DNA from: Macrostomum lignano
Taxonomy: Eukaryota
NCBI GenBank assembly: GCA_002269645.1
Contig: NIVC01002452.1
Coordinates: forward strand, 1 to 64,000
Length of the DNA: 64,000 nucleotides
Direction of reading: 5' to 3'
The notes below the pieces were generated by a model. That model saw nothing but the letters and a program-made list of their open reading frames with translations. It was not told where the DNA came from and searched no databases. Shown one piece after another: positions 3,786-34,916 of the stretch. The translations under genes were made by a program, and so were the position numbers. Each line of letters starts with the position of its first letter. Position 1 is the first letter of the stretch.

Positions 3786-4373
3786 CTTGAAATCCAGTTG
3801 AAAAGCTAGGTGGTAATATTTGGTTGGAAATTTCTGGAAGCGTCGCAGTGAATAGGCTCTTATTGTAGGGATTGCGCTTCAACCTTTTCTCCCTATCTGT
3901 CCAACTCTTGCCCCAAGCTGCTCCAGATAGATCCCCGCCACTTTGGGAGCGAGGGAGAGGAAAGATGGGCGTGTTGCTATGCAATAACGACTGTTTCTCC
4001 TCCCCCCCCCACTGTTCCATTGTTCTTTCTCAACTTTCCCATCTGCATCTCTCTCTCCTAGCCTTCCCCTCTCTATATATCCCCATCCTGTATTTCCCAG
4101 ACTAATGCTGCTTAACTGTACACAGCGGATGGACAAATTTGTTTTTCTTTCACTAAGCACTGGAGACTTGAATGTGAGGCTGGAATGGGCCAAGCCAGGT
4201 CGATTCATTTAAAAAGAAACAGCTCGGGAAAAATAGGCTGAAAGATGTTCGATAAACAGCGGAACCCATATTTGGACAAATGCTTGATTTCAAAACACTC
4301 CTTTCTGTCTATAGACTCCATATTGTCATCTGTCATGCGCATACGAGCTGAATAGTTTAGTTTTGATTTATTG

Positions 4374-4692
4374 CAGGGGTCGGCAAACTTTTTTACCCTA
4401 AAGGGCCAGATAGAAAGCCTATAGCGCTTAACTGCGGGCCGCAATAGGGGAGAGGAGAGATAATAGAAAAGAGAGATGGTGGAAAGAAGAGGCAAGGGAA
4501 TAAAGGAGAAGAGAGGAAAGACGAAATAGAAGAGAGAGAAGAAAAGTGAGAGGAGAGAGGAGGAAGAAGAGGCGAGACTGGAGAAATGAGAGGAGAGAAG
4601 GGAGAGGAGAGACAAACCCTGAGCAGGCCGGATTGCTATTGTGAAGTTTCAAAGGACCCGAGAACCGGATGTGGCCCGCGTGCCGGAGTCTG
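4374..4692 (+). mobile_element. hAT-like MITE, copy A, with internal GA-rich tract
   Basis: Begins caggggtcggcaaac; arms homologous to the element at 12557-13085 (opposite orientation); GA-rich core about 4446-4612; right end degenerate. Confidence 0.6.
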
Positions 4693-5012
4693 AGTTATTG
4701 CAAAGCAGCCCAGTGATTAACGCGCACATGACTCACGCGCTACAGTCCCCAGGTTTGAGTCCTTACGTGGCCGCATTAACTCGGGGCTTGTGCACGAAAA
4801 TTGGCCCCGGGAGCTTTCTAATGATGTTTAGAAATTCAGGGCGTGTGCTTGTTCTGTGGGGGGGGGGGCACAACTGCTGGGCTGCGAGTCGACTGTCGCC
4901 TTGTACGAGTATTTACGTAGCACTAATTAGAAACTGTAAGAAACTGAAACCTTACAAGCTTCGCGCATCAAAACAAATACTCGTTGCAGCCAAAGCCAGT
5001 TAGCCGGCACTG

Positions 5013-5203
5013 ATGGAGCCGGGCCAGACTCCCAAACCGGGCGTTGTTCCGCCGCCGAAACTGCACGCAGTTGTCTACATCTGCGGCGACTGTCATAAGG
5101 AAAGCGAAATCAAAGCCAAGGAGGTGATCCGCTGTCGGAGTGCGGCCATCGGATTATGTATAAGAAGCGCACGTCCCGAATGATTGTGTTTGACGCGCGT
5201 TGA
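5013..5203 (+). CDS. POLR2K: RNA polymerase I/II/III shared subunit RPABC4 (Rpb12), intronless; one G missing at 5137-5138 as assembled
   Basis: [21 protein letters not shown] then, after a one-base shift, [20 protein letters not shown]: the Rpb12 zinc-ribbon signature. Missed by the ORF track; AATAAA near 5319. Confidence 0.9.
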
Positions 5204-5808
5204 ATAACTAAGAAAATCATTTTGCTTGCTTAGTTTACTGTTCTGTGCACTTGCATTTGATTTGTTGTCTAAATAATGGTTTGTATTTTAGGTAATACCG
5301 CTGAAAACTGTTTGAATGTAATAAATTTATTTGGCTATGTTTGGTTTCAAATTTTATTATTAAAATGAAAATAAAAGTTCCGCTTTACTTGCTGTTTCTG
5401 TGGTTACTGTACTGTTACCATGGCTCAGTGTCTTGCACGACTGGATATAATTAGTATTCGTGTGATGTTTTTTTTCGAAATTCATTTTGGAGTTGCTTAT
5501 TGGAAATCATTCAGTCAAAAAATATCTTCTAAAAACTAAATCTGATCTGGATGGTTCGCAATTTTACCATAATTTGTACCGTTATGTACATTGATATTTC
5601 AAAGCGGGTTAACTTTAACAAGATCAATAATCCAACATTATTTTATTAGTTCACTAAATGTACGTGAATTACAGTACAGTTCAACAACTACAAAGTTTCT
5701 GAGTTAGATGTAAGCAACAGAACAGTTTTTACTATCGGTTATGATACTACGAGATGATACTCGTACATGTAGAACAAGTGTTTGAAATATCTGTACGCAC
5801 ATGCATAA

Positions 5809-6792
5809 ACCAAGGACCACTAGAAGTTACCGTTGTATCAGGACGCAACCCTCGTAAATATTGCAAAATTATTTGAAGGCCCACTTGTTTGCATTGCAGC
5901 TGAACTTTAAATGCTCATAACTCCCTAAACTCCGGACTGGTTGCACTTAAAAAGATATTTTTTCGCCAGGTTGCTCAAAATTTTGTTTTCTTTAATATGA
6001 TGCAAAGTTTGGCGCTATATATCTACATGTAGGAGCGGCGGGCGTACAGTAAAGTAACGGCAATACACAATATTTCATTGCATTCAAAATGAATAAAGTT
6101 TCAGTTACTTCAATTAGTGCCTCCTAGTCTCGATAAAGTAGCAGACCATACTTTATATCCCCCAGTTTGGAAGCTTTATAAAGCAGATAATCTGTACAGA
6201 GTTGAGTAGGCTGCAAAGGCATTATACACTTCACTATCAAAAACCAGTATAATCAAAATCAGGAAGGCATAATATTTCCGAAATCTTGGTACACCTGCCC
6301 AACAAGGACTCCAACATTCAAATGACAACTGCCATGACAGCAAAAAAGCTAAGGCTAGGCCTATAAGTTAGTAAAATAATATACTTGTTAAACTACTTTT
6401 TTGTTGATAGTTAATTAGTTAGAAGCCCATCTGATCCTTTTCTCAAGCTTTGTCGAATTAGTAGTTCTAGCACTTAGCAGTATATGTCAACTGTCTGCAT
6501 AAAACCTTGGCTTAGGAAATTCTAAAACGAGTTTCATATAGTGATATAATTACTTTAAAATTAATTTGCATCTAGATTTAATAGATTAAAGCCTAAATAA
6601 AGTATAAATACACCTATTTATGGAGCTTCTGAGGCTCAAATGTAGTGCATGTTTCTTTAAAACAGTCAAGTAGAATACTTTTTTGAAGGCAAGTACCGAT
6701 AAATACACGTAAACAAGCGGGCCTTCAAATAATTTTGCTATATTTACGAGTGTTGCGTCCTGATACAACGGTAACTTCTAGTGGTCCTTGGT
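5809..6792. mobile_element. Non-autonomous DNA transposon with about 80-bp terminal inverted repeats
   Basis: accaaggaccactagaagttaccgttgtatcaggacgcaac...gaaggccc at 5809 is inverted at about 6711-6792; ATAA flanks both ends (5805-5808, 6793-6796). Confidence 0.75.
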
Positions 6793-8110
6793 ATAAACAT
6801 GCATTATAAAAATAATTCGGAGTGAATTAATATAAAAACACGCACTATACGAGCTTTTGCTTTGCAGTTTATTCAAGATGGGGAATTTCCATTGCCTAAT
6901 CGACTGACTGTATTAAGTAAGTATGATTTATTTGTCCTTGGTGAATACGTAATTACACCTCAAGATTACAATAAGATTAATTTGTTTAAGTATAAAGTAA
7001 ACAAGCAGCTTGTTTTACATGTTAAAAAACACGTCTATTGCTGAATTTAAACTTTTTACTATTAAATTTGTTATAGCTTTATATTGCTAGATACGCTTCA
7101 GATATTTAACTTTTCTAAAAATATCGAATAGATACGCTTCAGATATTTAACTTTTCTAAAAATATCGAATTCGCATTTGCCATGCAATTATGCATCTACA
7201 TGACATGATTAGATCTAGGTTAGTAGGTTTATTGCATACTCAACAGTTTACCAATCTAACAGATTTTGTCTGAGACAGTCAGTATTAGAATTAATTAATA
7301 AATGCATTTTACTACGTTTCTATATCATTCTAGGATAATGTGCCTTTCGTCCGAGTATAAAAATGTATTAATAGCAATATTGTCGCGCTGATTTTACCAG
7401 TTGTTATGTTCCTGCTTCTAGGCTTTAGAAATTGTTTCTTGAGCGGCTGTTTCAATGGCTTCCTAATTGTCATTCTTAATTAATATAATCAGCATATCTA
7501 TTTGAAAACCTGTTTTTAGCAATTTTTTAAAATACATACATATTTTTTTACTTTTTCTGGATGCACTTACTATGGTGGTACTTGCATATTTAGAAATTAA
7601 AACAGTTTGTATTGCAGTATTATTTTATGTTAAACCGAATTTTAAAATGAACATATCTAAAAAATATTTAATATCTAATCACCTTTATTTTAGAAGGCAT
7701 AAATACAATGGATGATGTACATTGTCCATATAAACTTGTCCAAATCATCAAAAGGTTTATGATTTCCAGACAATTTTTTTTATTGTTTCTATTGAGTATT
7801 GTTAATATGAATTCCAAGTAGATAATTTAGTTTGAGGAATCTGTACCTTAAATTTATTTTAAGCTAGTTAAGACGTCCATTACCAAACCTGTAAGACCAA
7901 GTTAATATGGTTCATTGAATTAATTTATTCTGCCATTCTGCCAGAAACGAAAAAGCTAACCTTTAATTAAGCTTGCTGATCTATTAGTAATAAACTGGAT
8001 TGATTCCTCAATTTGTTTTTTTAACAAAATATTATGTTTCTAGTCATTTGAATTTCATTCTTTATACAACAAATAGCCGACAAAAATACATGCATGATCC
8101 CCAACCAACA

Positions 8111-11100
8111 ATGGGAAAGAAGAAAAAGGGAGGCGGCAAGAAGTCTAAGAAGTCTTCGCGCGCCCAATCTGGCGCCACTGGACAGGCTGGCGCGGGCGCC
8201 AAATTGGCGCCAGCATTGCCAGACAAGCGCGAACAGGAGGCCAAACTGCGCCAATTGAAGGATCTCCAACGTCGAGTAAGCGGACTTCAGAGACGCTGCG
8301 ACGAGTTGGAACTGTTGAACGACCAATTGAAGAGCAAGCGGGTGACGGTGTCGGGCGACATGGAGGAGATCACAGAGTACCTGCGCGACCGGGTGAGCGA
8401 GAAGACGAACACCTGCGCCGAGCTGCAGGAGGAGCTGCGCGCGCTTCAAGAGGCCTACGAGAAGGATCAGAAATCCTACGAGGAGAGAATGGAGAAGCAG
8501 AAGAAAGAATTTCGGGACACGAAGGAGCAGCTGGAGCAGGACGGGTTCACGCTGCGTGAGTTGAATTGAACGAAATTAAATTAACTTCAGTTACATGCGT
8601 TGTAGCGCTCTCCATCTTTTGGCGCCCTCTTGAATTAAATTCATTTCGCGCCCTCGTGAAATTCAATTTTAGCGCCCTCGTGAAATTCATTTCGGCGCCC
8701 TCTTGAAATTCATTTTGGCGCCGTCCCTACACTTATTCAATATTTCGTCGCCCTCTTGACATTCATTGTGACTTCCTTATAAGAATCATTTTGACGCCTT
8801 CTCGACACCCAATTTGGCGCCTTCCCGACACTCATTTTGGCGCCACATCCACTAAGTTTGGCTACCATTCACATGCAAGTTACAAAAGTATCTGTGAATT
8901 GTTAACAGCTTGCTGTACGCCGATCCCAACCGCAGAGAGCAAGCTGACCACCCTGGACGAGTACCGGATCCAGAAGGAGGAGATGCACGAGAAGTTCCAA
9001 GAAATGGACGAGAAAATGAAGCGCCAGGAGGAGATTCACAAGGAGGAGATCTACCTACTGGAGAGGGAGACAGTAGTGCAGAAAGACTCTCTGCGCAAGG
9101 AGATGGTCGAGAAAGTGAACGATGTGGCCAGCGAATTCCGCAAGGTGTCCAACAGGCAGATGGCAGAGACGACCCGGAAGACGATCGAAGAGAACGCGGC
9201 GCTCAACAGGCAGCTGGGCTCGCTCAGCGAGAAAATCACCGGCCTGATTGAGGAGAACGACAAAGTCAAGGCCAAGGAGAAGGAGCAGCAGCGGGAGATC
9301 GAGGTGCTGGAGTCCATCGAGAAGGAGATGCTGGCCAAGACTGCCAACTCGTTGAAGGTAAACTCGATCGCCTTCCAGAGTCACGGACGGACAAGAAATT
9401 AATTTGGGTTTTACAATTACTTGTGTGCTTTACTGATTCAATAAGAAGCCTATGCTCAAGTACTAGCGGAGGTTAACTAAGCTTTCCGCATAATATCTAT
9501 AAATTTGAAGGTCATTTGGCTCTCACTGGAAGTCAAATTTTCACTGACAGTCAATTGTCATTGACAGTCAAATTGGTCACTGACAGTCAAATTGGTCATT
9601 GACAGTCAAATTGGTCACTGTTAGTCAAATTGGTCACTGTTAGTCAAATTGGTCACTGTTAGTCAAATTGGTCACTGTTAGTCAAATTGGTCACTGACAG
9701 TCAAATTGGTCACTGTTAGTCAAATTGGTCACTGTTAGTCAAATTGGTCACTGATAGTCAAATTGGTCACTGATAGTCAAATTGGTCACTGACAGTCAGC
9801 TGTGTTTAAGATCAGTCTTTGAAAGGCAGAAAAGCATTACAACTCTGTCGAATACTTCAAAGTTATACAGTCGATTCGGTGTTTCCCATAATTATTAACA
9901 GCAGAGTTTGGGAGAACTTTTGCTTTAAAAATGCAACAGAAAGGATGCTAAAAAGGTGGCTAGCATTGTATAAACATAAAACTACAAGCCAGAATGGTTC
10001 AGAAGAAAATATTCGCACCAGATAAAACCTTTAGCTCGTAAACTAGTTAATTGGAATAGCTCGGCTTCAAAGCGGCCAGCAGGTCCCGATCAGCCGAGCC
10101 GAGCTCCTGCTGGCTAAAGTTGAACAGCTCCAGTTTGTCGCTAGGAAGCCGCTGTCTGAGCTCGTCAAAGAACGGGTGCGCCAGAGCTCGCAGCGGTGCC
10201 AACCGGCTGCCAGGCTGGTAGGCGAGCAGGCGGCACAGCAGGTCCAGCAACTCGGGCGGTGTACCAATCGGGAAGCTCAACTGCGGGTCAGGGGCCACCT
10301 GTGGCAGCGGGAACTTCTCATATACTGGATTCATAGCCAGCAGGTCGCGCTTGGTTGGCGTGCCCAGCACCCGGATGATGGCCACCAGCTGGTCCAGCGA
10401 GTTGTTAGCCATGAACAGGCAGTGGCCGATGCACAGCTCGGCAAGCACGCAGCCGACTGACCACAGGTCGATGGCGCAGCTGTAATTAGTAGAGCCGAAC
10501 AGCAGCTCGGGAGCTCGGTAGTACCTAGAGCTGATGTACGCCACTCCGGCTGCGGCGGCCGCGTTGGCGCCGCTGCCTTCGGCAAGTTCGCCGGGCAGCG
10601 GCAGCTCCTTGGCCGAGCCGAAGTCGCACAGGCGCAGGCGGCAGTCGGATTCGTCAACGAGAACGTTCGGGCTCTTGATGTCCCTTGGGAAGGAAAGTAA
10701 TCCGGTTCCAAGACACTATAATGCTGCAGTCACGTGTTAGGCCTTGTTTTTAAGGCCTAACGCCAGCCCCACATGTCCCCTTTTTTTTCTGGGCCAGCTT
10801 CCCAGATCCTCAGTTGCTGGGCCAGCCTCCCAGATTCCCAGTTGCTGGGCCTGCCTCACAGGTCCTCAGTTGCTGGGCCAGCATCCCAGATCTCCAGTTG
10901 CTGGGCCAGCCGGCCAGATCCCCAGTTGCTGGGCCAGCATCCCAGATCCCCAGTTGCTGGGCCAGCCTCCCAGATCCTCAGTTGCTGGGCCAGCCTCCAA
11001 GATCCCCATTTGCTGGGCCAGCATCCCAGATCCCCAGTTGCTGGGCCAGCCTCCCAGATCCTCAGTTGCTGGGCCAGCCTCCAAGATCCCCAGTTGCTGG

Positions 11101-14100
11101 GCCAGCCTCCAAGATCCCCAGTTGCTGGGCCGGCCGGCCAGATACCAGTTGCTGGGCCTGCCTCTCAGGTCCTTAGTTGCTGGGCCAGCCTCCCAGACTC
11201 CCAGTTTCTAAGTCTGACGCTGTTCCAGATGGTCATAGCTGCTCCGTCATCAGCCGCTCACCTGTGGCAGATGCGATGCGAATGCATATAATTGATAGCT
11301 CGCAGAAGCTGGTAGGCAAAGATTCGCACTTTGAGCATGGAAGGCAAAGTCTCAGCTTTCCTGTATCTTGCCAGCAAGTCTAACAGACTCTCCGGGAAGA
11401 GCTCAGTAACCAGGTGCAAATAGAGCTTCGGGCTCTTGATGTCCCTTGGGAAGGAAAGTAATCCGGTTCCAAGACACTATAATGCTGCAGTCACGTGTTA
11501 GGCCTTGTTTTTAAGGCCTAACGCCAGCCCCACATGTCCCCATTTTTTTCTGGGCCAGCTTCCCAGATCCTCAGTTGCTGGGCCAGCCTCCCAGATTCCC
11601 AGTTGCTGGGCCTGCCTCACAGGTCCTCAGTTGCTGGGCCAGCATCCCAGATCTCCAGTTGCTGGGCCAGCCGGCCAGATCCCCAGTTGCTGGGCCAGCA
11701 TCCCAGATCCGGCCAGATACCAGTTGCTGGGCCTGCCTCTCAGGTCCTTAGTTGCTGGGCCAGCCTCCCAGACTCCCAGTTTCTAAGTCTGACGCTGTTC
11801 CAGATGGTCATAGCTGCTCCGTCATCAGCCGCTCACCTGTGGCAGATGCGATGCGAATGCATATAATTGATAGCTCGCAGAAGCTGGTAGGCAAAGATTC
11901 GCACTTTGAGCATGGAAGGCAAAGTCTCAGCTTTCCTGTATCTTGCCAGCAAGTCTAACAGACTCTCCGGGAAGAGCTCAGTAACCAGGTGCAAATAGAG
12001 CTTGCCCGGGTCCATCTTGCCCCGGCAGTAGTAGTGGTAGCGCAGTCGCACCAGATTCTCGTGCTCACCAAGTGCGTACAGAGTGCGCAGTTCCCGATTT
12101 TTGTAGCGCGGATCCTGCAGCACCCGCTTGAGAGCCACCGACTCGCCTGACTCGGACAGGCGGCCTCGGTACACGGAGCCGAACGTGCCGGATGCGATTG
12201 GCCCCTTGATGAATGAAGTTTAGAGCGCCTGCGCTATATGGTGATGCAGTTACTCGTAATACCAGGCGCCAAACGATCGTATTCCATTTTATTTTATTTT
12301 ATCCAATTCAAATTGGCGCCAAACACTGGGACTGCTAAATTGTCGTTTATAGTATTCCGAAAACAAAACACAATTAAAAAACTTTAAAAACAAACACAAT
12401 TAATAAAATATTTAGCTGTGTTAACTGCTTAACGATTGTTTATTTAACAATACCGTTTTGGCGCCAAATTTGAACTAGATTGAATTTTAACGAACGCCAA
12501 AACGAGAAAAATTCCATTTTTTAGAAAGTACAGAAGAAAATTGAGTCTCTAGTTAACAGGGGTCAGCAAACTCCGGCCCGCTCAGTGCTTATATCTCTTC
12601 TCAGCGCTCTTCTATCTAATCTCCTCTCTCCTCTCCTCTCCTCTACTCTACTTTACTCTCTCCCTTCTCCTCTGCTCTCCTCTCCTCTCCTCTCCTCTCC
12701 TCTCCTCTCCTCTCCTCTCCTCTCCTCTCCTCTCCTCTCCTCTCCTCTCCTCTCATCTCATCTTAACTTCTTTCATCTCCTCTCATATCCTCTCATCTTC
12801 TATCATCCCATCTCCTCTCCTCTCCTCTCCTCTCCTTTCCTCTACTTTACTCTCTCCCTTCTCCTTTCCTCTCCTCTCCTCTCTCCTCTTCTCTCCTCTC
12901 CCAATTCATCTCTTCTTGTTCTTTCCTCTCGTCTTCTCTTTTCTCGTTTATTCCCTCGCTTCAAGCCTCTTTCTCCCTATCTCCCTCTTCTTCTTTATTC
13001 CCTCCTTCTCTTCCCTCCTCCGGCCCGCAGTTTTGACCTAGGTTCTCTATTTGGCCCTTGTGGTAAAAACGTTGGCCGACCTCCGCTCTAGTATTTCATG
13101 TCGTTATTCAGGCAGTTTTACGCATTGTAAATGCACAACTCGACTCAATGCGAAATCGTACACTACTCGTACATGCAAGTCGCTTACCGTAGACACAGTC
13201 AGTTCAATTTGTCTATAAGACTGTCTCTGGATCGGATCAAAAGCCGGACAAGCCATGACGGAAACTTGCAACTGTTTTTTTTGTCGGCTGTGCGACGAGC
13301 GCGTCTTCTCGCCGTCGAATTGGTCGTCATAGCTGATTAAGGACATTTCTTGCTTCTTGTTTGCGAGTCCCAAGTCTTGGTTCAACAAAAAAGTGCCTAT
13401 TTAACTTCGATTTGGTTCAGCAGGCATTCTATTGAAGCCAATTGTTGGGTCCTGGCGTAGAATTTTATAACTTTGGGGTGCTTGGGTTTGGGGGGTTTGT
13501 TTTGGGTTTTATGACCCCCCTTCCTCAAACACCCATTTATAGTGAATGTACAATGCAATGTACATTTAGAAATAGCTTCTTAGTACATCTCGTCTAACAA
13601 GTTTTTCTGTACAGTTTTCACGTTGATTGAATGTAAATTTCTTTGTAATTAATTATCTGCAATACCTCACCAGAGCAGAGCTTGCTGCCTAGTCAGTTTT
13701 ACATCAATTTTGAAAACCCCCTCTGAGTCTGTCATTGGAATACAGACTGCTACAAACTATACATGTACAATAGTTTAACTGAAGTGAACTGAAGTTTTTT
13801 TTAAGTGCCACTTGGTCTGGTTTTTCACTGGACAGACAATACGAGCGTTGTTTTGCGATGTAAAAGTGAAAGTCAAATGGTTATTTTGGTTGATGCTGCT
13901 CGGCAGGGAAGAGCAAAAGGTCGCGGCTCCCGACCGGTACTGGCCCCGGGTCGCCCACCATCACTAAACCTGAAAAATCACAACTCCGAAAAGCATTGTT
14001 CATCATAGGCTCGATATATCATAGCACCGAAAGTGCTAGCGGGTTTGTCGTTTGTGATATTTCGGGTTTTTGATATTTCGGGTTTTTGATATTTCGGGTT

Positions 14101-14962
14101 TTTGATATTTCGGGTTTGTGATATTCCGAATTTGTGATGCCCTCTGGCCCATTCTACGAGTCGTATGTCACCTCCAAAGACGCAGCCTCTGCATTGATAA
14201 TAATTTTTTTAAGAAACAATTTTTTATTTCCTTTTTTTTAAATCGCAGACAATCCGCAGCCTCGCCGACGTGTGTCGCGACCGCGACACTCAACTAATCG
14301 ACATGGAGGAGCGAGCCGAGGCCGGCGACTCCGTGCAGTCCGAGCACAGCCTGCTCGGCGCCCAGGCCGAGTCACAGTCCCAGGAGTTAGTTGCTATGCG
14401 CACCGAGACATCCAACCAGCTAACCGAACTGGACCGCCTGGCCGAGCTGGCCCGCCAGACCGCGCGCATCCACAGGCGGTTCCAGCGCCTGCTGCGCCAG
14501 TCGGAACGCGCCGTGTCTGACGCATTTTCAACTTTAACGCCGGACGAAGAGATGACAGAAGCTGAGGCGGTCATACTCCGTCGCAAAATGTTGGTGAGCC
14601 TGCTGGAACTGCTGCACATGGCGGCCAGGGTCGGCCTGGGCCCCGAACCGGCCAGTCTCGGCCGCGCTGGCCAGCCGGGCACGGTTGAGCGGAAACCGTT
14701 GCGAGCGTCGTCAGCTTCCGGCGGTGCGCCTTCGTCCGCTGGCAAACGCGGCAGCGGCGGCGGCCTGGTCAGCGAGCGCCTCAGCGAACTCGGCCTGGCC
14801 CCGGCAGCCGCCGCCACAAAGCGCAGCGGCGGAGGTGGCGGTGGCGTCTCCTCCCGGACGGAGTTCGTGGCCGAGAAGCTGGCCACCCAGCTGCCGCCAG
14901 GCGGCCTGCTGGAGCCGCTGATCCTGCGCCGCGGCCGTCCAGTGCCCGCTGGCATCTTCTAG
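8111..14962 (+). CDS. CFAP157: Cilia- and flagella-associated protein 157; exons 8111-8555, 8936-9357, 14249-14962 (526 aa)
   Basis: Lys-rich N-terminus, long coiled coil, EMVEKVNDVASEFRKVSNRQMAETTRKTIEEN motif; GT-AG junctions phase-compatible (1, 0); total 1581 nt divisible by 3. Confidence 0.8.
8600..8830. repeat. Degenerate about 24-bp repeats with GGCGCC core in CFAP157 intron 1 (MITE-like subterminal repeats)
   Basis: ttttggcgccctc(t/g)tgaaattcat repeated; similar motif inside the MITE at 43492-43843. Confidence 0.55.
9540..9800. repeat. 19-bp minisatellite (agtcaaattggtcactg[tt/ac/at])
   Basis: About 13 tandem units in CFAP157 intron 2. Confidence 0.9.
10047..12204 (-). CDS. GSK3/shaggy-like Ser/Thr kinase nested in CFAP157 intron 2; exons about 12204-11837, [11444-11262 duplicated cassette], 10683-10047; 5' end unresolved
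   Basis: GTFGSVY, VALKRVLQDPRYKNREL, HR|DIKSPN, LCDFGSAK, AYISSRYYRAPELLFG, IDLWSVGCVLAEL, GTPT...MNP.Y..FP.PQV, ALAHPFFDELR; splice CAC AG|gt ... aag|G GAC restores HRD. Confidence 0.85.
10789..11206. repeat. 28-bp minisatellite family array in GSK3-like intron (copy 1)
   Basis: (gctgggccagcctcccagatcc[c/t]cagtt)n. Confidence 0.9.
11550..11781. repeat. 28-bp minisatellite family array in GSK3-like intron (copy 2, shorter)
   Basis: Same unit, fewer copies. Confidence 0.9.
12557..13085 (-). mobile_element. hAT-like MITE, copy B, with internal CT-rich tract
   Basis: Left caggggtcagcaaac, right gttggccgacctccg (imperfect TIR); subterminal arm matches copy A; CT tract about 12590-13020. Confidence 0.65.
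14056..14135. repeat. 16-bp tandem repeat (gatatttcgggttttt)
   Basis: 4-5 units. Confidence 0.8.
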
Positions 14963-15909
14963 AGGAAGGACTACAGTAGATGGGCTTCTCGTTTAATTTT
15001 CTTGCAAAAAGCGCTTAGTCTACTTTCTTTTGGGCATATGAGCGCGCATGGCTATCTAAATTTATCTGAATTCTCCGTTAGAATTTCAAATTTCAGTAAG
15101 AGAAGAAAAGAAACAGATAAAGAGGCTGGATAAATTAACCGACTTGATGTCGTTGTCGTCACAATGTACATTTTGAGGAAGACAATAAATTGGGGGTAGT
15201 TTTTTATTTCACCTCAGCGCGCAAATTTATTTAACAAGACGCCAAACAGACGCCCAAATCGAAAGTAGTATTTTCTATTATTTGGCCTTGATGACTAAAT
15301 TCCAACTGTAACACACTTCAATCCTGTTTGCTCCATTGTTTCCAATGGTTTTCTTTTCATTTTTTTACAAAACTCTTAGACCTCCCGTCTCTCCGTGTGT
15401 CCGTCACGTTTCATTTTGCTTGCTTTTTTGTCGACTTGTCCAAATGGGCCTTTTTTATTTTGTTATTTTCGTGTGAAAAAATTCAAAAGTAACGAATTTG
15501 CTTGCGTCACTAAAATCAAGAGTGGAGGCTGTTACGCGTATATATTCTACCGTATTTTGTTTTCGTATTTTTTACTCCGTCCTTTCTAACTATATTACTT
15601 CTATCATTCCGTTAGGTAGTATGTACGGTATGATGCAGATGTATACTTTAATGTGCTTGTCAGAGAGAGAACTGCCACATTCAAGCAGATTTCAAACTAT
15701 AATTTGTCAATAATTTTGGGTTTTAAATGTCGGAAGCACCACCAGGTATAATAACTACAGTTTGCCTCACTGAAATGAATACTTCATTCACTTTAATCAC
15801 TGTCACGGAAGAATATAGCTGCATGCATGGATGAGGCCCTGGAATATAATGGGAACACGATAACTGGCTGTGGCAATTTGATTGCTCCAAATTAACTGAT
15901 AAACATAAT

Positions 15910-16140
15910 AACCCTAACCTAAACCTTATCCTAAACTTGAGTTTATAAAACTCAACCTTAACTAAAGCCCTCAGCCCTAACCTAAAACCCGAACCCCAGC
16001 CCAAACCCCAACGCTAAACAAAAACCTAGCCCTAACCTAAAACCCGAACCCCAGCCTAAACCCCAACGCTAAACAAAAACCTAGCCCTAACCTAAAACCC
16101 AAACCCCAGCCTAAACCCCAACGCTCACCCTACTAACCTA
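15910..16140. repeat. Telomere-like CCCTAA-rich tandem repeat (about 57-bp unit)
   Basis: agccctaacctaaaacccgaaccccagcc... in about 3 copies plus degenerate ccctaa. Confidence 0.7.
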
Positions 16141-16261
16141 AAGTGTCAATTGTCGTGGACCCAAAAATAATTTGTTTGCGTAATATCTATAATGGCGAAT
16201 TACTTTTAGGCAGCCTAATTTTATTGACTCATTAATTTCTCTAATTTATCAATCTATAGAT

Positions 16262-17167
16262 TTATGACGCGGACAGAAAGTTGGTGTTAATCAAGTAGTG
16301 CTCGTAGCAGCAGGCCCTGACGATGCCCGACAGGCCTTCAAAGAATACCGACTGCGGATTCCTGTGCGAGTGCCAGACGCGAAAGCCGAGATCAAAGAGG
16401 CGCCGCCACACTCGCAGAAATTTCGCATAGTCCGAGCCTTGGCCGCGCATCTCGGCAGTGTGAGACTCGAAAATCAGCTGCTTGACCCGCCTCAGGCAGC
16501 CTTCACTGATGGCCCGGTCAAGACTGTCCCACTCCCAGTATTCGATGTCCACTTTGACGATGTCCACTTTGCCGTCACTGAAGCCGAGATCCACGAACAG
16601 CTCGCACAGTGTGCGCATCCTCCAGCCTGAGCTCCCCTCGCTGCTCTTGTTGCCCCAGAGGCCCACCTGGTAGAACCAGGCGGACCGGCTTCGCTGGTGA
16701 TCCGGCACCGGCATGCTTGGGTCGAACATGTACACCTTGCAGCCGAACCGGCCCGACAGCTCGTCGTCGTAGCTCCAGACGTTGTTGATGCCGAACGAGA
16801 ACGCCACGCAGGACTTGCCGATGTTGAAGGGCTCGCTGATGCAGACATCCCAGCCTCCATCCAGAGCGTCTCCAACTCGGACACTGGTTGGACAGGCGAT
16901 CTGTAGCTCGTCAGTCACGTTGAAGTAAAGATTCTCAAGCTCAACAGCAGACAGCTGATTTAAGTTTATATTGCTTAGCGCGTGACCTTTGTGCCACCTC
17001 GGGGTCGGAGCTGCAGCTTTCGACTGGCCAACATTAATGTTTCCAATTCCTGCGATTCTGTGACTAATAGGAAAGTTGTTGAATATGCGAATGACAGCGA
17101 CTGACAGAAGCAGCAGCAGCACTATTGCTGCAGAGAACAGCAACTGAAAGCGTTGCACCAGAGGCAT
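16262..17167 (-). CDS. Methyltransferase-like protein 24 family (Methyltransf_22), intronless, N-terminal membrane anchor
   Basis: DGGWDVC, SFGINNVWSYD, CKVYMFDPS, DIVKVDIEYWEW, VKQLIFESH, CCYE motifs; hydrophobic segment after ATG at 17167 (ORF-track start 17221 is TTG). Confidence 0.8.
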   Translation of the reverse strand: MPLVQRFQLLFSAAIVLLLLLSVAVIRIFNNFPISHRIAGIGNINVGQSKAAAPTPRWHKGHALSNINLNQLSAVELENLYFNVTDELQIACPTSVRVGDALDGGWDVCISEPFNIGKSCVAFSFGINNVWSYDDELSGRFGCKVYMFDPSMPVPDHQRSRSAWFYQVGLWGNKSSEGSSGWRMRTLCELFVDLGFSDGKVDIVKVDIEYWEWDSLDRAISEGCLRRVKQLIFESHTAEMRGQGSDYAKFLRVWRRLFDLGFRVWHSHRNPQSVFFEGLSGIVRACCYEHYLINTNFLSAS

Positions 17168-17624
17168 TTTCGAGTGAATGATAAATTTCAAAGAAAGCTT
17201 TCCGAATGATGCACTATTCAATCGAACGTATTTGTAGTGAACAGGACTTGGATTTTTTCACCTTGTTTATTCAGGCAACGTGGTATCCCCAGAGCCTATA
17301 ATGACCTGAAACCAAATCCCTTCTCAAACCCGATCCATTTACGAGCTAAATTGAAAATTGAATAAATAAGATCGCAAATGAATTGTCAGTGGTACAGCTG
17401 AGAATATAATCGTTAGAATCCTGCTTCTTCTTTTGACTTTTGCCGTTTCAACGTAAGCGATATGGCGCCTGAGTATGTAACGTGAACAGAGTATTGGAAT
17501 TACGAGCATAGTACTCGTAGTAGCAGTCTATACGGTATATTCTGCACTGGATTATTTGAAGTAATGGATTTTAGATTTAGACGGCAAACTTTCCAAGGAC
17601 ACAGGGCACTAACTTAGGCAACAG

Positions 17625-18885
17625 ACTAGCTATCTGAGAGGACATGACCTCAGACAAATTTATGCAACAGGCTATCTGAGGACATGACCTGAGAGACAAA
17701 TTTATGCTACAGGCTATCTGAGGACATGACCTGAGAGACAAATTTATGCTACAGGCTATCTGAGGACATGACCTGAGAGACAAATTTATGCTACAGGCTA
17801 TCTGAGGACATGACCTGAGAGACAAATTTATGCTACAGGCTATCTGAGGACATGACCTGAGAGACAAATTTATGCTACAGGCTATCTGAGGACATGACCT
17901 GAGAGACAAATTTATGCTACAGGCTATCTGAGGACATGACCTGAGAGACAAATTTATGCTACAGGCTATCTGAGGACATGACCTGAGAGACAAATTTATG
18001 CTACAGGCTATCTGAGGACATGACCTGAGAGACAAATTTATGCTACAGGCTATCTGAGGACATGACCTGAGAGACAAATTTATGCTACAGGCTATCTGAG
18101 GACAAGCTACGAATTTGTCACCTACTTTCACAAGCGCTAAACTTTACTAACGCTAAACTTCACAACCGCTAAAACACAAATGTCGCCTACTTTCACAAGC
18201 GCTAAACTTTACTAACGCTAAACTTCACAACCGCTAAAACACAAATGTCGCCTACTTTCACAAGCGCTAAACTTCACAAGCGCAAAACTTCACAAACGCT
18301 AAGCACGAATGTCGTCTATTTTCACAAGCGCTAAAATAGTATATTAGTATATTAGTATAGTATATTAGTATAGTATATTAGTATATATAGTAAATTAACA
18401 TTTTAGCGCTTGTAAAAGAAGCCGACATTCGCGTTTTGGGGATTGTAAAGGTTAGCGTTTGTGAAGTTTAGCGCTTGTGAAAGTAGGCGACATTTGTGTT
18501 TTAGCGGTTGTGAGGTTTAGCGTTTGTGAAGTTTAGCGCTTGTGAAAGTAGGCGACATTTGTGTTTTAGCGGTTGTGAGGTTTAGCGTTTGTGAAGTTTA
18601 GCGCTTGTGAAAGTAGGTGACAAATTCGTAGCTAATTTGAAATATGCTAATTTGTATGAAGTTTTGCGCTTGTGAAGTTTAGCGCTTGTGAAAGTAGGTG
18701 ATTTCGCTATTCTGAAGTTTAGCGTTTGTGAAGTTTAGCGCTTGCGAAAGTAGGTGAGTTAGCGCTTATGAAAATTAGCGCTTGTGAAGCCTCCCCGACA
18801 AATTTATGCAACAGGCTATCTGCATGAGGACATGACCTCAGACAAATTTATGCAACAGGCTATCTGAGGACATGACCTCAGACAA
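17625..18885. repeat. 42-bp minisatellite (gctatctgaggacatgacctgagagacaaatttatgctacag) interrupted at 18105-18795
   Basis: About 11 units before and 2 units after the inserted foldback element. Confidence 0.9.
18105..18795. mobile_element. Foldback/palindromic MITE, left end truncated
   Basis: agctacgaatttgtcacctactttcacaagcgctaaac (18105) inverted at about 18595-18633; modular gtttagcgcttgtgaa repeats; AT-rich centre. Confidence 0.75.
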
Positions 18886-23786: not shown

Positions 23787-25565
23787 ATGCCTCTGATGTA
23801 TGACCGACCGAAAATGTCTCAGGCGATGTACCAATCGCTGAAGCGGCACATCGTCCGCCAGCGCAAGAGGGATGCCGACATGAAAATGCTTGACGCCACC
23901 AATCAGCGGCTGCGAGCAGAGCGGGAGGAACTCCGCAGGCAGACGCTGCAGTCGTTGAGAAAGACCAAAGATGAGGTTGGAAGCCTGCAAGCTTTTAATT
24001 TGTCATTCTAAGAGAATTTGGGAAGGTGAGCAACTGAATATCTGGGAGGCTGGCCCAGAAACTGAGGACTGGAAGGTGACCCAAAAAATGAGGATCTGGG
24101 AGGCTCTCCCAACAACAACTGGGGATCTTCCGGATCTAGGAGGCTGGCCTAGCAACTGAGTATCTGGGAGGCTGGCCCAACAACTGAGGATCTGAGAGGC
24201 TGGCCCAGCAACTGAGTATCTGGGAGGCTGGCCCAACAACTGAGTATCTGAGAGGCTGGCCCAGCAACTGAGGATCTGGAAGGCTGGCCCAGCAACTGAG
24301 GATCTGGGAGGGTGGCTTAGCAACTGAGGATCTGGGAGGCTGGCCCAGCAACTGACACTCTGGGAGGCTGGCCCAGCAATTGGGGATCTGGGAGGCTGGC
24401 CCAGCAACTGACACTCTATAGGCTGGCCCAGCAACTGACACTCTATAGGCTGGCCCAGCAACTGACAGTCTGGGAGGCTGACTCAGCAACTGACAGTCTG
24501 GGAGGCTGGCCCAGCAACTGACACTCTGGGAGGGTGGCCCAGCAACTGAGTATCTGGGAGGCTGGCCCAGCAACTGAGTATCTGGGAGGCTGGCCCAACA
24601 ACTGAGTATCTGAGAGGCTGGCCCAGCAACTGAGGATCTGGGAGGGTGGCTTAGCAACTGAGGATCTGGGAGGCTGGCCCAGCAACTGACACTCTGGGAG
24701 GCTGGCCCAGCAATTGGGGATCTGGGAGGCTGGCCCAGCAACTGACACTCTATAGGCTGGCCCAGCAACTGACAGTCTGGGAGGCTGACTCAGCAACTGA
24801 CAGTCTGGGAGGCTGGCCCAGCAACTGACACTCTGGGAGGGTGGCCCAGCAACTGAGTATCTGGGAGGCTGGCCCAGCAACTGAGTATCTGGGAGGCTGG
24901 CCCAGCAACTGAGTATCGGGGAGGCTAGCCCAGCAACTGAGTATCTGGGAGGCTGGCCCAGCAACGGAGGATTTGGGAGGGTGGCGGTAGCGTAGCCTGA
25001 GCATTCACCTCTGGCCCAACACCACCTGTCCTGTACCCGCTGAAAGGTGAAGCGACTCCAAGGCCGCCTCGAAAAACTGCGCGAAGAGAAGAGCAAGCTG
25101 TTCAGCCGCTTCAAGGAGGTCTTTACCGAGGAGTCAGTCCAGAAGGAGCGCCAGAAGGAGGTGCAGAGCCACTTGCCACACCTGCAGCAGCAATTCCAGC
25201 AGCAGCAGCAGCAGACAAGCCTTTACCTGCAAGATATGCGGCATAGCCAGCCTCCGCCAGCTTCATCTTCGACCAGGTTGGGTAAGCGGGCAGCCCGCAG
25301 TCCGAGCCCCGTGTCAGGCGTTCGTCAGGCGAAAGCCGCCGCGAATACAGCCGTGTTCTCTCAGCAGCATTCTTCGGCATTAAAATCGGCCACTACCGGA
25401 CATATGCAGCATCCGCTGTCGGCCTCCTATAGGGGCTCCATCACTACTGGACAGTCGGCTCAGCAGATGCAGTTTCAGATGCAGCAGCAGCCGCAGCAGC
25501 GCCATTTCGGAGCACCGGTTTACCCCCCAGGCTACGGCGGTGACGGTTTCAAGCATCCCTTTTGA
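23787..25565 (+). CDS. GPS2: G protein pathway suppressor 2; exons 23787-23975, 25047-25565 (235 aa)
   Basis: MPLMYDRPKMSQAMYQSLKRHI...TKDE|VKRLQGRLEKLREEKSKLF matches the GPS2 N-terminal coiled coil; phase-0 GT-AG intron; Q/S/P-rich tail. Confidence 0.8.
24031..24990. repeat. 28-bp minisatellite family array in GPS2 intron
   Basis: (aactgag[g/t]atctgggaggctggcccagc)n with duplicated multi-unit blocks. Confidence 0.9.
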
Positions 25566-27215: not shown

Positions 27216-27912
27216 GCCCAGACACTGGGGATCTGGGAGCCTGGCCCAGCTACTGGGGATCTGGGAGCCTGGCCCAGCTACTGGGGATCTGGGAGGCTGG
27301 CCCAGCTACTGGGGATCTGGGAGCCTGGCCCAGCTACTGGGGATCTGGGAGGCTGGCCCAGCTACTGGGGATCTGGGAGGCTGGCCCAGCTACTGGGGAT
27401 CTGGGAGGCTTGCCCAGACACTGGGGATCTGGGAGCCTGGCTCAGCAACTGAGGATCTGGGAGGCTGGCCCAGCAACTAAGGATATGGGAGGCTGGCCCA
27501 GCAACTGACACTCTGGGAGGCTGGCCCAGCTACTGGGGATCTGGGAGGCTGGCCCAGCTACTGGGGATCTGGGAGGCTGGCCCAGACACTGGGGATCTGG
27601 GAGCCTGGCTCAGCAACTGAGGATCTGGGAGGCTGGCCCAGCAACTAAGGATCTGGGAGGCTGGCCCAGCAACTGACACTCTGGGAGGCTGGCCCAGCTA
27701 CTGGGGATCTGGGAGGCTGGCCCAGCTACTGGGGATCTGGGAGGCTGGCCCAGACACTGGGGATCTGGGAGCCTGGCTCAGCAACTGAGGATCTGGGAGG
27801 CTGGCCCAGCAACTAAGGATCTGGGAGGCTGGCCCAGCAACTGACACTCTGGGAGGCTGGCCCAGCAACTAAGGATCTGGGAGGCTGGCTTCCAAGATCC
27901 GGGAGGGTGGCG
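27216..27912. repeat. 28-bp minisatellite family array, no host gene identified
   Basis: Same unit with about 6-unit higher-order repeats; ends gggagggtggcgg like the GPS2 array. Confidence 0.9.
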
Positions 27913-32936: not shown

Positions 32937-34916
32937 CTAAAAGTCAGCCTTAGTATAAGCAACTAAACAGAACTCGCACAGGTCGGCAAGCCTGTTGGCG
33001 GCCTCCTCGCTCAGCAGGCAGCGAAATCGCGGATTGGCCAGCCGGTCTCGGGTCGGCGCCGCGGCAGTCAGGAAGCCCAGGCGGACCAGATCGACCAGGC
33101 AGGGCAGGGCGGCGGTGGCGTCGAAGACCTGCGACTCTCGCGAGATCACCCGACAGATGTTCAGCAGGCGTTCCAGCGGCACCGGTCGGACGGCCAGGGC
33201 CTCCATAGCGGCGGCGGCGGCTACTGCAGCCGGCTTTTTCTGCTTCTTCCGAGGCTTCTGCCTTCGACCGGAGTTGAAGGCGAACATTCGGCGATCGTGA
33301 GAGGGCGGCACGCGGGTGCACAGGAAGGCGGCCAGAAGGAGGAAGCGGCTGAGCAGCGGCAGGTCGGCAAACTGCTGCTGCTGCTGCTTCACGCCCCCGA
33401 CGCCAGTCAGCGCAGCCGATGCGACTGGAGACGTCAGCGGAGTCAGCAGGCCGCGCAGATGGGAGCACAGGATCGCTTTGATCTTGCCGCCACCGCTACT
33501 AGCGGAGCAGGCGGACCGGCAGGAGGCGACGGCCTCAGCGATGAGTGCGGGCTGCCGCGTCATCGGGAAAGCGATGTCGACGGCCATCTGGACGATGGGG
33601 TCGCGGTCGCCGCCAGGTAGGCCAGCTGACACAATGTCCACCAGCTGCGGCTTGGTGTAGGCCGGCAGGTGGAGGCTGCGGGGGCAGATGCGGTTTGGGA
33701 TTTGGGATAGCTGGCTCACCGACTGACGATCTGAGATGCTGGCCCAGCAACTGAGGATCTGGGAGGCTGGCCCAGCAACTGAAGATCTGGGAAACTCGCC
33801 CCCAGCAACTGAGGATCTGGGAAACTCGCCCCTAGCAGCAACTGAGGATCAGGGAAACTCGCCCCCAGCAACTGAGGATCAGGGAAACTCGCCCCCAGCA
33901 ACTGAGGATCTGGGAAACTCGCCCCCAGCAACTGAGGATCTGGGAAACTCGCCCCTAGCAGCAACTGAGGATCTGGGAAACTCGCCCCCAGCAACTGAGG
34001 ATCTGGGAAACTCGCCCCCAGCAACTGAGGATCTGGGAAACTCGCCCCTAGCAGCAACTGAGTATCTGGGAAACTCGCCCCTAGCAGCAACTGAGTATCT
34101 GGGAAACTCGCCCCTAGCAGCAACTGAGGATCTGGGAAACTCGCCCCTAGCAGCAACTGAGGATCTGGGAAACTCGCCCCTAGCAGCAACTGAGTATCTG
34201 GGAAACTCGCCCCTAGCAGCAACTGAGTATCTGGGAAACTCGCCCCTAGCAGCAACTGAGTATCTGGGAAACTCGCCCCTAGCAGCAACTGAGTATCTGG
34301 GAAACTCGCCTCTAGCAGCAACTGAGGATCTGGGAAACTCGCCCCCAGCAACTGAGGATCTGGGAAACTCGCCCCCAGCAACTGAGGATCTGGGAAACTC
34401 GCCCCCAGCAACTAAACACAAGCAAACAAACCAATAGGCAGAGGCGGCGGCCGCGGCGGCGCAGCCCCTGGCGTAGCTGGTCCAGGGCAGGCGGCCAACC
34501 AGCAGCAGGCGAGCGCCAGTCAGCTGCCGGATTCTCATCAGGGCGGCCAGTATTTTGCCATCGGCGGACTCGGCCAGACGCTCGGCGTCGTCCAGAGCGA
34601 GCCAGTCTCCGGGCCGGAGGCAGCAGCCGAGAGCGCTGGCCCAGTCGTCTGCGGGATCAGGCCTCCTGGAGCAGCCATCCCCGCTGGAAGCCAGGTGAAT
34701 GATGAAGTCTACCAGCTTCCTGACGCTGCCAGCCGACTCGGTGCAGGTGAGCCGCAGGTGAGGCAGGCCGGATAGCGCAGCCTCGGCCAGAAGGGTCTTG
34801 CCGCAGCCCGGCGGGCCCCACAGGTGTACAAAGGACACCGTGGACTCGGGAGGCTGTTCCAGCAATTGGCGAAGCTGAGCGAACTCCACTTCGCGACCAA
34901 CAATGCGAGTTTTTGC
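32937..34916 (-). CDS. ORC5: Origin recognition complex subunit 5; exons 34916-34432, 33675-32937; no genomic ATG
   Basis: IVGRE, Walker A GPPGCGKT, LALDDAERL, LHLPAYT, LPLLSRFLLLAAFLCTRVPPSHDRRMF, PVPLERLL, LVDLVRLGFL, PRFRC; phase-2 GT-AG intron; 1224 nt in frame. Confidence 0.85.
33725..34413. repeat. 28-bp family array diverged to 30/33-bp units in ORC5 intron
   Basis: First units canonical (ctgggaggctggcccagc), remainder ctgggaaactcgccc[c/ctag]cagc. Confidence 0.9.

What the first reader, a model, noticed from the sequence alone, without database searches (positions are those of the whole stretch)
10666..12001. Exon+intron tandem duplication creates an in-frame 183-nt cassette exon inside a kinase catalytic core
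Seen: the duplication joins ...AGC CCG AA to G CTC TAT TTG (about 2-nt microhomology), giving a chimeric exon 11444-11262 of exactly 183 nt, phase 2/2, flanked by two copies of the same intron. Inclusion repeats 61 aa (KLYLHLVTELFPES...CHRDIKSP, hinge through catalytic loop, two HRD motifs); skipping restores a normal kinase. The copies differ in array length and one substitution, which argues against simple read duplication. Inference: a snapshot of intron gain/exon birth by intragenic duplication.
Basis: seen in the sequence. Interest (0 to 1): 0.7.

Follow-up and report, generated by a model that had tools for sequence, protein, structure and literature searches.

The report
Young tandem duplication inside flatworm kinase gene
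One copy of a GSK3-like kinase gene in the flatworm Macrostomum lignano carries a very recent 0.6-0.8 kb tandem duplication that copies an existing intron and creates an extra in-frame 183-nt exon; this is a real but ordinary kind of gene-structure mutation, and whether the extra exon is ever used in mRNA is unknown.

Summary
On the minus strand, 12003-11427 (577 nt) and 11428-10666 (763 nt) are direct tandem copies. They differ by one substitution (T 11542 vs A 10781) and one 186-nt block inside a 28-nt minisatellite. The junction CCCGAA|GCTCTA has 2-nt microhomology and lies in unique exon sequence. The middle exon, 11444-11262, is 183 nt, phase 2/2, between two GT..AG copies of one intron. 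The window is Macrostomum lignano contig NIVC01002452.1 (Mlig_3_7). The gene is a divergent GSK3-family kinase, and its GenBank product PAA57716.1 is the skipped form. A second contig (NIVC01004173.1) carries the identical duplication. A paralogous contig (NIVC01001104.1) has one copy with the intron at the same codon, so it shows the empty site. The intron is therefore not new: an existing intron was multiplied by an internal gene duplication, a known mechanism. An assembler mis-join is unlikely. However, the two duplication-bearing contigs are near-identical in this block and the window contig is a mosaic, so they are not fully independent witnesses. Nothing here shows inclusion of the exon. 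By inference inclusion is the default, giving a 448-aa kinase with a 61-aa insertion, tolerated because other gene copies are intact. Interest is low to moderate.

The parts
13188..13346 (-). Kinase exon 1 (CDS start, 53 codons MSLISYDD...ELTVST), donor GTAAGC
   Evidence: tblastn of P0001 residues 1-53 at 100%; coordinates and donor; the annotated gene range in L001 maps to window 13346-10047.
12205..13187 (-). Intron 1 (983 nt). It contains the (CTCTC)n tract 12626-12901, where the contig's nearest relative switches.
11837..12204 (-). Exon 2 (368 nt): glycine loop through HR of HRD. It ends in phase 2.
11427..12003 (-). Duplication copy 1 (577 nt including the 2-nt microhomology): last 166-167 nt of exon 2, intron A and the first 17 nt of the following exon
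11445..11836 (-). Intron A (392 nt, GT..AG) with the short 28-nt minisatellite array (about 11550-11781) and a small hairpin at 11498-11521
11262..11444 (-). Chimeric middle exon: 183 nt, phase 2/2 (17 nt of exon-3 head plus 166 nt of exon-2 tail). It encodes (R)DIKSP-KLYLHLVTEL...HRICH(R).
11427..11428 (-). Duplication junction: AA microhomology between ...CCCGAA and (A)AGCTCTAT...
   Evidence: the identical junction 21-mer is present in L003 and absent from L002.
10666..11428 (-). Duplication copy 2 (763 nt). It carries 186 extra nt of minisatellite (11135-10950) and A instead of T at 10781.
10684..11261 (-). Intron B (578 nt, GT..AG) with the long minisatellite array (10789-11206) and a hairpin at 10737-10760
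10047..10683 (-). Last exon: (R)DIKSPNVLVD...DFG...SRYYRAPE...SYSN plus the stop codon

Best explanation
This is a genuine, very young intragenic tandem duplication in one subgenome copy of a divergent GSK3-family kinase gene of the neopolyploid flatworm Macrostomum lignano (line DV1). A non-homologous event with 2-nt microhomology (end-joining or replication template switch; inferred) duplicated about 575 bp. The duplicated segment runs from codon K120 in exon 2, through the pre-existing phase-2 intron in the HRD arginine codon, to 17 nt into the next exon. The result is a second copy of that intron and a chimeric 183-nt in-frame exon between the two copies. Afterwards the intronic 28-nt minisatellite changed length in one copy by 186 nt, and one point difference arose. 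Consequence (inferred, not shown): all four splice sites are identical and strong, so removal of both introns, meaning inclusion, is the expected default. That gives a 448-aa protein in which copy 2 builds the kinase core and copy 1 hangs out as a 61-aa insertion in the beta4-beta5 loop. This protein is probably impaired. Joining donor 1 to acceptor 2 instead hides the whole duplicate inside one 1,153-nt intron and yields the normal 387-aa kinase, which is the form in the GenBank annotation. The variant is tolerated because the genome holds about three copies of most loci and the paralogous copy (L002) is intact. In kind, it is an ordinary internal gene duplication that multiplies an existing intron.
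For: Structure. Organism and locus: L001 (NIVC01002452.1) is 100% identical to the window. The gene is GSK3-family: Pkinase 4.5e-47, and the best solved structures are GSK3beta at 3e-89 versus MAPK at 1e-43. Second occurrence: L003 (NIVC01004173.1) has the same junction, the same 575/761 spacing and the same T/A difference, with 2 differences in 2,039 bp. It differs from the window by 1-2% substitutions upstream of 12,500. Empty site: L002 (NIVC01001104.1) has one copy with the intron at the same position and its own version of the array, and it encodes P0001 exactly. The gene was under purifying selection until recently: 7 synonymous versus 3 non-synonymous differences in 1,164 nt between the window and L002. 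The junction lies in unique exon sequence, the window has no N, and the assembly is from PacBio long reads (Canu). The skipped form equals annotated PAA57716.1. The AlphaFold2 model of the inclusion form places residues 181-241 in the core at block-mean pLDDT about 89-97 and residues 120-180 at about 42-73. The three-copy genome is described in PMC10733133. Precedents for multiplying a pre-existing intron are cited in PMC4974935.
Against: No reads were examined, so the duplication rests on consensus sequence of a draft assembly that its own authors and later workers call error-prone and redundant. The two duplication-bearing contigs are near-identical over window 6,000-12,500. The window contig is a mosaic: it is identical to L002 over 13,500-18,000 and to L003 over 6,000-12,500. 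The second contig may therefore be the same physical locus assembled twice. There is no transcript evidence for inclusion, and the only annotated product is the skipped form. No inclusion-form protein is among the close hits in the searched collection. The AF2 result is biased because MAFFT aligned all homologues to copy 2.
Confidence: 0.8

Rival explanations
1. Assembly or consensus artefact: the DV1 genome has only single-copy versions, and the tandem copy was created during Canu assembly, Pilon polishing or haplotype merging.
For: Mlig_3_7 is a draft of a roughly triplicated genome with known copy-number errors. Most 4-copy blocks have only 3-fold read coverage. This locus appears on 4 contigs: L001, L002, L003 and one further contig that carries P0121 but was not shown. 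Only 64% of bases were called error-free by REAPR. The window contig switches its nearest relative inside a (CTCTC)n tract, which fits haplotype-switch chimerism. Pilon was run with RNA-seq as well as DNA reads.
Against: The junction CCCGAA|GCTCTA lies in unique exon sequence with only 2 nt of overlap, so no overlap-based join could create it. The whole structure (1.34 kb) is shorter than typical PacBio reads. The two copies differ by a substitution and by array length, and both differences are reproduced in a second contig. There is no N or scaffold gap in the window. A mis-join inside the minisatellite would change array length. It would not place an exon-3 head next to an exon-2 tail.
Confidence: 0.1
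2. A functional, regulated cassette exon: the duplicated allele makes both isoforms, and the 61-aa insertion form has a role of its own, for example an inactive or dominant-negative kinase.
For: The exon is in frame with perfect splice sites. The skipped form is annotated at this locus. The inclusion form can be modelled with an intact kinase core.
Against: The copies differ by one base, so selection has had no time to shape anything. The inserted segment repeats buried core elements (beta5, alphaD, alphaE, catalytic loop) rather than a modular unit. No inclusion-form protein is on record. The predicted pre-mRNA fold gives mostly intra-intron pairing, with 12 pairs between introns A and B against 108 and 173 within them. 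So no looping-out device for regulated skipping is apparent.
Confidence: 0.05
3. A silent intron enlargement: the spliceosome always pairs donor 1 with acceptor 2, so the duplicate is simply an intronic pseudo-exon and the gene is unaffected.
For: The GenBank model for this contig is exactly this join and gives the intact 387-aa kinase. It is analogous to tandem-duplication intron models in which the duplicate is spliced out and the protein is unchanged.
Against: The inner acceptor and donor are identical to the outer ones and flank a normal-sized 183-nt exon. General knowledge of exon and intron definition, and of in-frame exon duplications in human genes, predicts inclusion. The annotated model may derive from transcripts of the single-copy paralogue or from de novo transcripts in which a perfect 183-nt repeat was collapsed. 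BLAT hits within 1% of the best hit were kept, and multimapping was allowed.
Confidence: 0.25

Closest known systems
Internal (intragenic) tandem duplications that multiply a pre-existing intron (Arabidopsis TOUCH3, Knowles & McLysaght 2006; genome-wide survey by Gao & Lynch 2009; both as cited in PMC4974935)
   Same: The duplicated segment contains a whole intron plus exon sequence on both sides. Intron number rises by one, and a new internal exon is formed from the two partial exons.
   Different: This case is extremely young (1 substitution in 577 nt) and present in only some subgenome copies. It also repeats a non-modular piece of a kinase core, not a self-contained repeat unit.
Intron creation by tandem duplication (Rogers' AGGT model; ATP2A1, Hellsten et al. 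2011; potato RdRp, PMC4974935)
   Same: A tandem genomic duplication provides duplicate splice signals. If donor 1 pairs with acceptor 2, the duplicate is removed and the protein is unchanged.
   Different: In those cases a new intron is made from formerly exonic sequence. Here both introns are copies of an intron that already existed (L002), and the protein is unchanged only if the middle exon is skipped.
In-frame internal tandem duplications in human kinase genes (FLT3-ITD; EGFR and BRAF kinase-domain duplications). From my own knowledge, not tested here.
   Same: An in-frame tandem duplication inside a protein-kinase gene. Short microhomology at the junction is typical of FLT3-ITD.
   Different: Those are somatic. 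They either duplicate a whole kinase domain through intronic breakpoints or a short juxtamembrane stretch, and they activate the kinase. Here 61 aa of the core (beta5 to catalytic loop) are repeated in the germ line, with unknown and probably negative effect.
Canonical GSK3 (GSK3beta / shaggy)
   Same: It gives the best sequence matches (3e-89). The VLQDxRYKNRE, HRDIK, DFGSAK and SRYYRAPE motifs, the activation-loop Tyr and the phosphate-pocket Arg/Arg/Lys positions are conserved.
   Different: Identity is only 47-49%. There is an insertion of about 12-13 residues, Ala-rich, in the activation segment. HRDIKSPN replaces HRDIKPQN, and the first glycine of the G-loop is Ala. So it is a divergent lineage-specific paralogue, not the canonical orthologue (inference).

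Membership tests
Internal tandem gene duplication including an entire intron | Two adjacent direct copies within one gene, each holding partial exon, whole intron and partial exon | tested here: met
Internal tandem gene duplication including an entire intron | The single-copy (ancestral) arrangement exists in a paralogue or orthologue, with the intron at the same site | tested here: met
   L002 has one copy, the same phase-2 intron position, and encodes P0001 at 100%.
Internal tandem gene duplication including an entire intron | The duplication is present in the organism's DNA and is not only an assembly product | tested here: inconclusive
   It is seen in two contigs with the junction in unique sequence. 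However, the contigs are near-identical in this block, the window contig is a mosaic, and no reads were available.
Intron gain by tandem duplication (Rogers AGGT model) | The new intron derives from duplicated exonic sequence that supplies GT and AG | tested here: not met
   Both introns are copies of a pre-existing intron that is also present in L002.
Cassette (alternatively spliced) exon | Both inclusion and skipping transcripts come from the same allele | not testable with these tools
   Only the skipped product is annotated. There is no inclusion-form protein among the close hits. No RNA-seq access.
Introner / transposon-derived intron | The intron sequence, including its ends, recurs at other loci | tested here: not met
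   Within the 64-kb window, only the 28-nt array recurs (24.0-25.0, 27.0-28.0, 33.5-34.5 and 47.5-48.5 kb). The intron flanks do not.
GSK3 family (CMGC protein kinases) | Protein kinase domain with the catalytic residues K, E, HRD, N, DFG and APE | tested here: met
   Pfam Pkinase 4.5e-47. These residues fall in invariant alignment columns K79, E91, H236/R237/D238, N243 and D257-G259 of the inclusion numbering.
GSK3 family (CMGC protein kinases) | Closer to GSK3 than to any other CMGC group; GSK3 signature SRYYRAPE and activation-loop Tyr | tested here: met
   GSK3beta about 300 bits versus MAPK about 150 bits.
GSK3 family (CMGC protein kinases) | One-to-one orthologue of canonical GSK3 | tested here: inconclusive
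   Only 47-49% identity to animal GSK3 proteins. No phylogeny was made.

The most novel reading that the evidence does not exclude
The duplicated allele is transcribed and yields both mRNAs. That would make it a newborn exon, one mutation old and perfectly duplicated, inside a kinase core. Inclusion gives a GSK3-like protein with a 61-aa beta4-beta5 insertion. Intact and duplicated copies sit side by side in one neopolyploid genome, which would be a natural experiment on how a spliceosome handles identical competing sites and on the first step of exon birth.
Probability: 0.25. Interest if true: 0.45.

Novelty: new member of a known kind. Interest (0 to 1): 0.3.

Why it matters
Very young internal duplications with a preserved empty site are the raw material for exon and intron multiplication, and few are caught at one substitution of age. 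Here allele-specific SNPs lie 6 and 20 nt into the downstream exon (codons 179 and 184). Existing short-read RNA-seq could therefore show directly how identical duplicated splice sites are used. Practically, the case flags a gene model in the M. lignano reference that hides a structural variant. It also shows that the contig carrying that model is a mosaic of subgenome copies. Beyond that it is an ordinary mutation in a redundant gene copy.

Tried and rejected
1. My first gene model started at the ATG at 12287 with a 58-nt intron. It gave the wrong frame. The real first exon is 13346-13188.

2. Introner or transposon origin of the intron. Only the 28-nt array is dispersed in the window, and the intron ends are unique.

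3. Looping-out of the middle exon by pairing between the two introns, which could favour skipping or circular RNA. The minimum-free-energy fold of the 1,281-nt pre-mRNA segment has 12 inter-intron pairs against 108 and 173 intra-intron pairs. There is no support.

4. A structured RNA in the region. Rfam found nothing in 9,000-14,000.

5. An exon of the opposite-strand host gene inside the duplication. The plus-strand ORFs there are translated minisatellite, and the host's coding ORFs lie at about 8.1-8.6, 8.95-9.4 and 14.3-15.0 kb. Pfam gave no hit for the host protein, which I stitched together approximately.

6. Looking up P0001 on contigs. It is not on record. Its locus was reached through P0121 instead.

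7. A haplotype mis-join at the minisatellite as the cause. It cannot produce the exon-exon junction.

8. The fourth contig carrying P0121 could not be displayed.
Full report
**Observation.** I read the minus strand of 10,300-12,400. It shows a kinase coding sequence interrupted twice by the same intron. The repeat finder gives two long direct matches, 10666-10949 = 11427-11710 and 11134-11428 = 11709-12003. A global alignment of the upstream copy (12003-11427, 577 nt) with the downstream copy (11428-10666, 763 nt) shows one substitution and a single 186-nt gap.
- The substitution is T at 11542 versus A at 10781. The extra block is 11135-10950, inside a 28-nt minisatellite.
- The junction reads ...CAAGAGCCCGAA|GCTCTATTT.... 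The parental left and right breakpoints are GGGCAAG|CTCTAT and CCCGAA|CGTTCT, so two bases (AA, 11428-11427) are shared.
- The middle exon 11444-11262 is exactly 183 nt.
- Both introns (392 and 578 nt) have the same CAG|GTGAGC donor and TTCCCAAG|G acceptor.
- The intron sits after the second base of the Arg codon of HRD (phase 2).
- Inclusion repeats 61 residues, and skipping gives a continuous kinase.

**What the locus is.** The skipped-form protein hits Pfam Pkinase at 4.5e-47. Its best relatives are GSK3 proteins at 44-49% identity. Against solved structures, GSK3beta scores 3e-89 and MAP kinases only 1e-43. The GSK3 motifs, the activation-loop tyrosine and the primed-substrate pocket residues are conserved. 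There is an insertion of about 12-13 residues, Ala-rich, in the activation segment.

One hit is 99% identical: a Macrostomum lignano protein, P0001. Its cluster also holds P0122 = PAA57716.1 (BOX15_Mlig023110g1, 387 aa). P0122 equals the window's skipped form exactly. The contig encoding P0122, NIVC01002452.1 of assembly GCA_002269645.1 (Mlig_3_7), is 100% identical to the window.

The full gene model on the minus strand is:
- exon 1: 13346-13188
- intron 1: 13187-12205
- exon 2: 12204-11837
- intron A: 11836-11445
- chimeric exon: 11444-11262
- intron B: 11261-10684
- last exon: 10683-10047

My first guess of a start codon at 12287 was wrong. The kinase gene lies antisense inside a large intron of an annotated plus-strand gene for a 530-aa coiled-coil protein. 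None of that gene's coding ORFs falls in the duplicated segment.

**Related loci.** A 121-aa product of the last exon (P0121) is annotated on three further contigs of the same assembly, and two could be read.
- L003 (NIVC01004173.1) contains the same junction 21-mer and the same spacings (575 and 761 nt). It differs from the window at 2 of 2,039 positions around the duplication, so it also shares the T/A difference and both array lengths.
- L002 (NIVC01001104.1) has a single copy. It runs from exon 2 through one intron at the same codon position, with its own variant of the 28-nt array, into the last exon, with no junction sequence. It encodes P0001 at 100%.

L002 is therefore the empty site, and the intron predates the duplication. 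The coding sequences of the window and L002 differ at 10 of 1,164 positions, 7 synonymous and 3 not. Their introns differ by 6-8%. The gene family has thus been under constraint. The two tandem copies differ by only 0.17%, so the duplication is far younger than the split between these paralogous copies.

**Is it real?** Mlig_3_7 was built from PacBio reads with Canu. It was polished with Pilon using Illumina and RNA-seq reads, and annotated with StringTie/TACO plus BLAT-mapped de novo transcripts (PMC5730564). The DV1 genome holds about three diverged copies of most loci, and the assembly has copy-number errors (PMC10733133).

Several points argue against an artefact:
- The junction lies in unique exon sequence with only 2 nt of overlap, so an overlap-based mis-join cannot make it.
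- The structure is shorter than the reads.
- There is no N in the window.
- The copy-specific differences are reproduced in a second contig.

There is a caveat I had not expected. The window has 0 substitutions against L002 over 13,500-18,000 but 1-2% against L003 there. It has at most five substitutions against L003 over 6,000-12,500 but 1-8% against L002 there. The switch lies in the (CTCTC)n tract of intron 1. The window contig is therefore either a true recombinant or gene-converted copy, or a haplotype-switch chimera. In the second case L001 and L003 may describe the same physical copy of the duplication. I put the probability that the duplication exists in DV1 DNA at about 0.85-0.9. It is present in one or two of the three or four copies.

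**How it arose and what it does.** These points are shown:
- The breakpoints lie in two neighbouring exons.
- The junction has a 2-nt microhomology.
- The minisatellite is not at the junction.

These points are inferred:
- The event was a single non-homologous step, end-joining or a replication template switch.
- The array then changed length by 186 nt; the extra block contains an 84-nt three-unit higher-order repeat.
- One base changed.

At the RNA level nothing is shown. The four splice sites are pairwise identical and the 183-nt exon is of ordinary size. From general knowledge of exon and intron definition, and of in-frame exon duplications in human genes, I expect both introns to be removed, meaning inclusion. 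I could find no device favouring skipping: the predicted pre-mRNA fold pairs each intron mainly with itself.

The inclusion protein (448 aa) can only form a kinase in one way. Copy 1's HRDIKSP is followed by K instead of the essential N, so copy 2 must supply the core and copy 1 becomes an insertion between beta4 and beta5. An AlphaFold2 model agrees: residues 181-241 have block-mean pLDDT of about 89-97 and residues 120-180 about 42-73. That model is biased, because the alignment placed all homologues on copy 2. A 61-residue insertion made of normally buried helices is likely to impair the protein, and the intact paralogue would buffer this.

The alternative join of donor 1 to acceptor 2 hides the duplicate in a 1,153-nt intron and gives the annotated 387-aa protein. 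The annotation does not prove that this allele is spliced that way. Multimapping reads, and de novo transcripts from the single-copy paralogue or with a collapsed perfect repeat, would give the same model. The only hit above 50% identity in the protein search was the P0001 cluster, and none of its three members is an inclusion form.

**Comparison with what is known.** Tandem internal duplications that carry a whole intron with exon sequence on both sides have been described (Arabidopsis TOUCH3; the survey of Gao & Lynch 2009). The literature explicitly separates them from de novo intron creation by duplication (Rogers' AGGT model, ATP2A1, potato RdRp) (PMC4974935). This case belongs to the first class and fails the defining feature of the second. 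The intron is not an introner-like element: within the window only its minisatellite is dispersed. In-frame tandem duplications in human kinase genes (FLT3-ITD, EGFR-KDD) are a loose analogy from my own knowledge. They duplicate other parts of the protein and were not tested here.

**Verdict.** It is over-stated where it speaks of intron gain, because a pre-existing intron was copied. It is untested where it speaks of a cassette exon. This is a new member of a known kind of mutation, in a redundant gene copy of a neopolyploid genome. Interest is about 0.3. The main value lies in the ready test of splice-site choice with allele-specific SNPs, and in flagging a mosaic contig and a gene model that hides a structural variant.

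Noticed in passing
window 6000-18000 (switch at about 12600-13400): The window contig (NIVC01002452.1) is a mosaic. It has 0 substitutions versus NIVC01001104.1 (L002) over 13,500-18,000. It has at most five substitutions versus NIVC01004173.1 (L003) over 6,000-12,500. It is 1-8% diverged from the other contig in each block, and 4,000-6,000 differs from both. The switch falls in the (CTCTC)n tract of kinase intron 1. It is either a recombinant or gene-converted subgenome copy, or a haplotype-switch chimera of the assembly.
   Followed up: partly
window about 8099-14962, + strand: An annotated 530-aa gene lies on the opposite strand. It has coiled-coil-like ORFs at about 8.1-8.6, 8.95-9.4 and 14.3-15.0 kb, so the whole kinase gene is nested antisense in its large intron. 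Pfam gave no hit for the roughly stitched protein.
   Followed up: partly
window 24050-24967, 27241-27871, 33739-33781, about 47500-48500: The same 28-nt minisatellite (core CTGGCCCAGCAACTG) forms further arrays elsewhere in the window: 71 matches against 0.03 expected. Each unit contains a small CCCAG...CTGGG hairpin. It is a dispersed genomic minisatellite family.
   Followed up: partly
window 9523-9798; L002 8616-9915: A 19-nt tandem repeat (TCACTGATAGTCAAATTGG, 14.7 copies) starts about 250 nt downstream of the kinase stop codon. The matching tract spans about 1.3 kb in the paralogous contig L002, versus about 0.28 kb in the window.
   Followed up: no
window 10737-10760 and 11498-11521: A perfect 9-bp stem hairpin (TTAGGCCTT-AAAAAC-AAGGCCTAA on the gene strand) lies about 55-80 nt upstream of each intron acceptor. 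It is slightly altered in L002. Its significance is unknown.
   Followed up: no
window about 10540-10620 (kinase activation segment): Relative to GSK3beta the kinase has an insertion of about 12-13 residues, Ala-rich (PLPGELAEGSGANAAAAAG), between DFG and the activation-loop tyrosine. Two of the three amino-acid differences from the paralogue L002 fall in it. In the AF2 model residues 274-288 have pLDDT below 50.
   Followed up: no
L002 8001-8366 and L003 8001-8366: On the paralogous contigs the same gene is annotated only as a 121-aa fragment starting at an internal Met of the last exon, although both contigs encode the complete kinase. The reference annotation is therefore inconsistent between copies.
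   Followed up: partly
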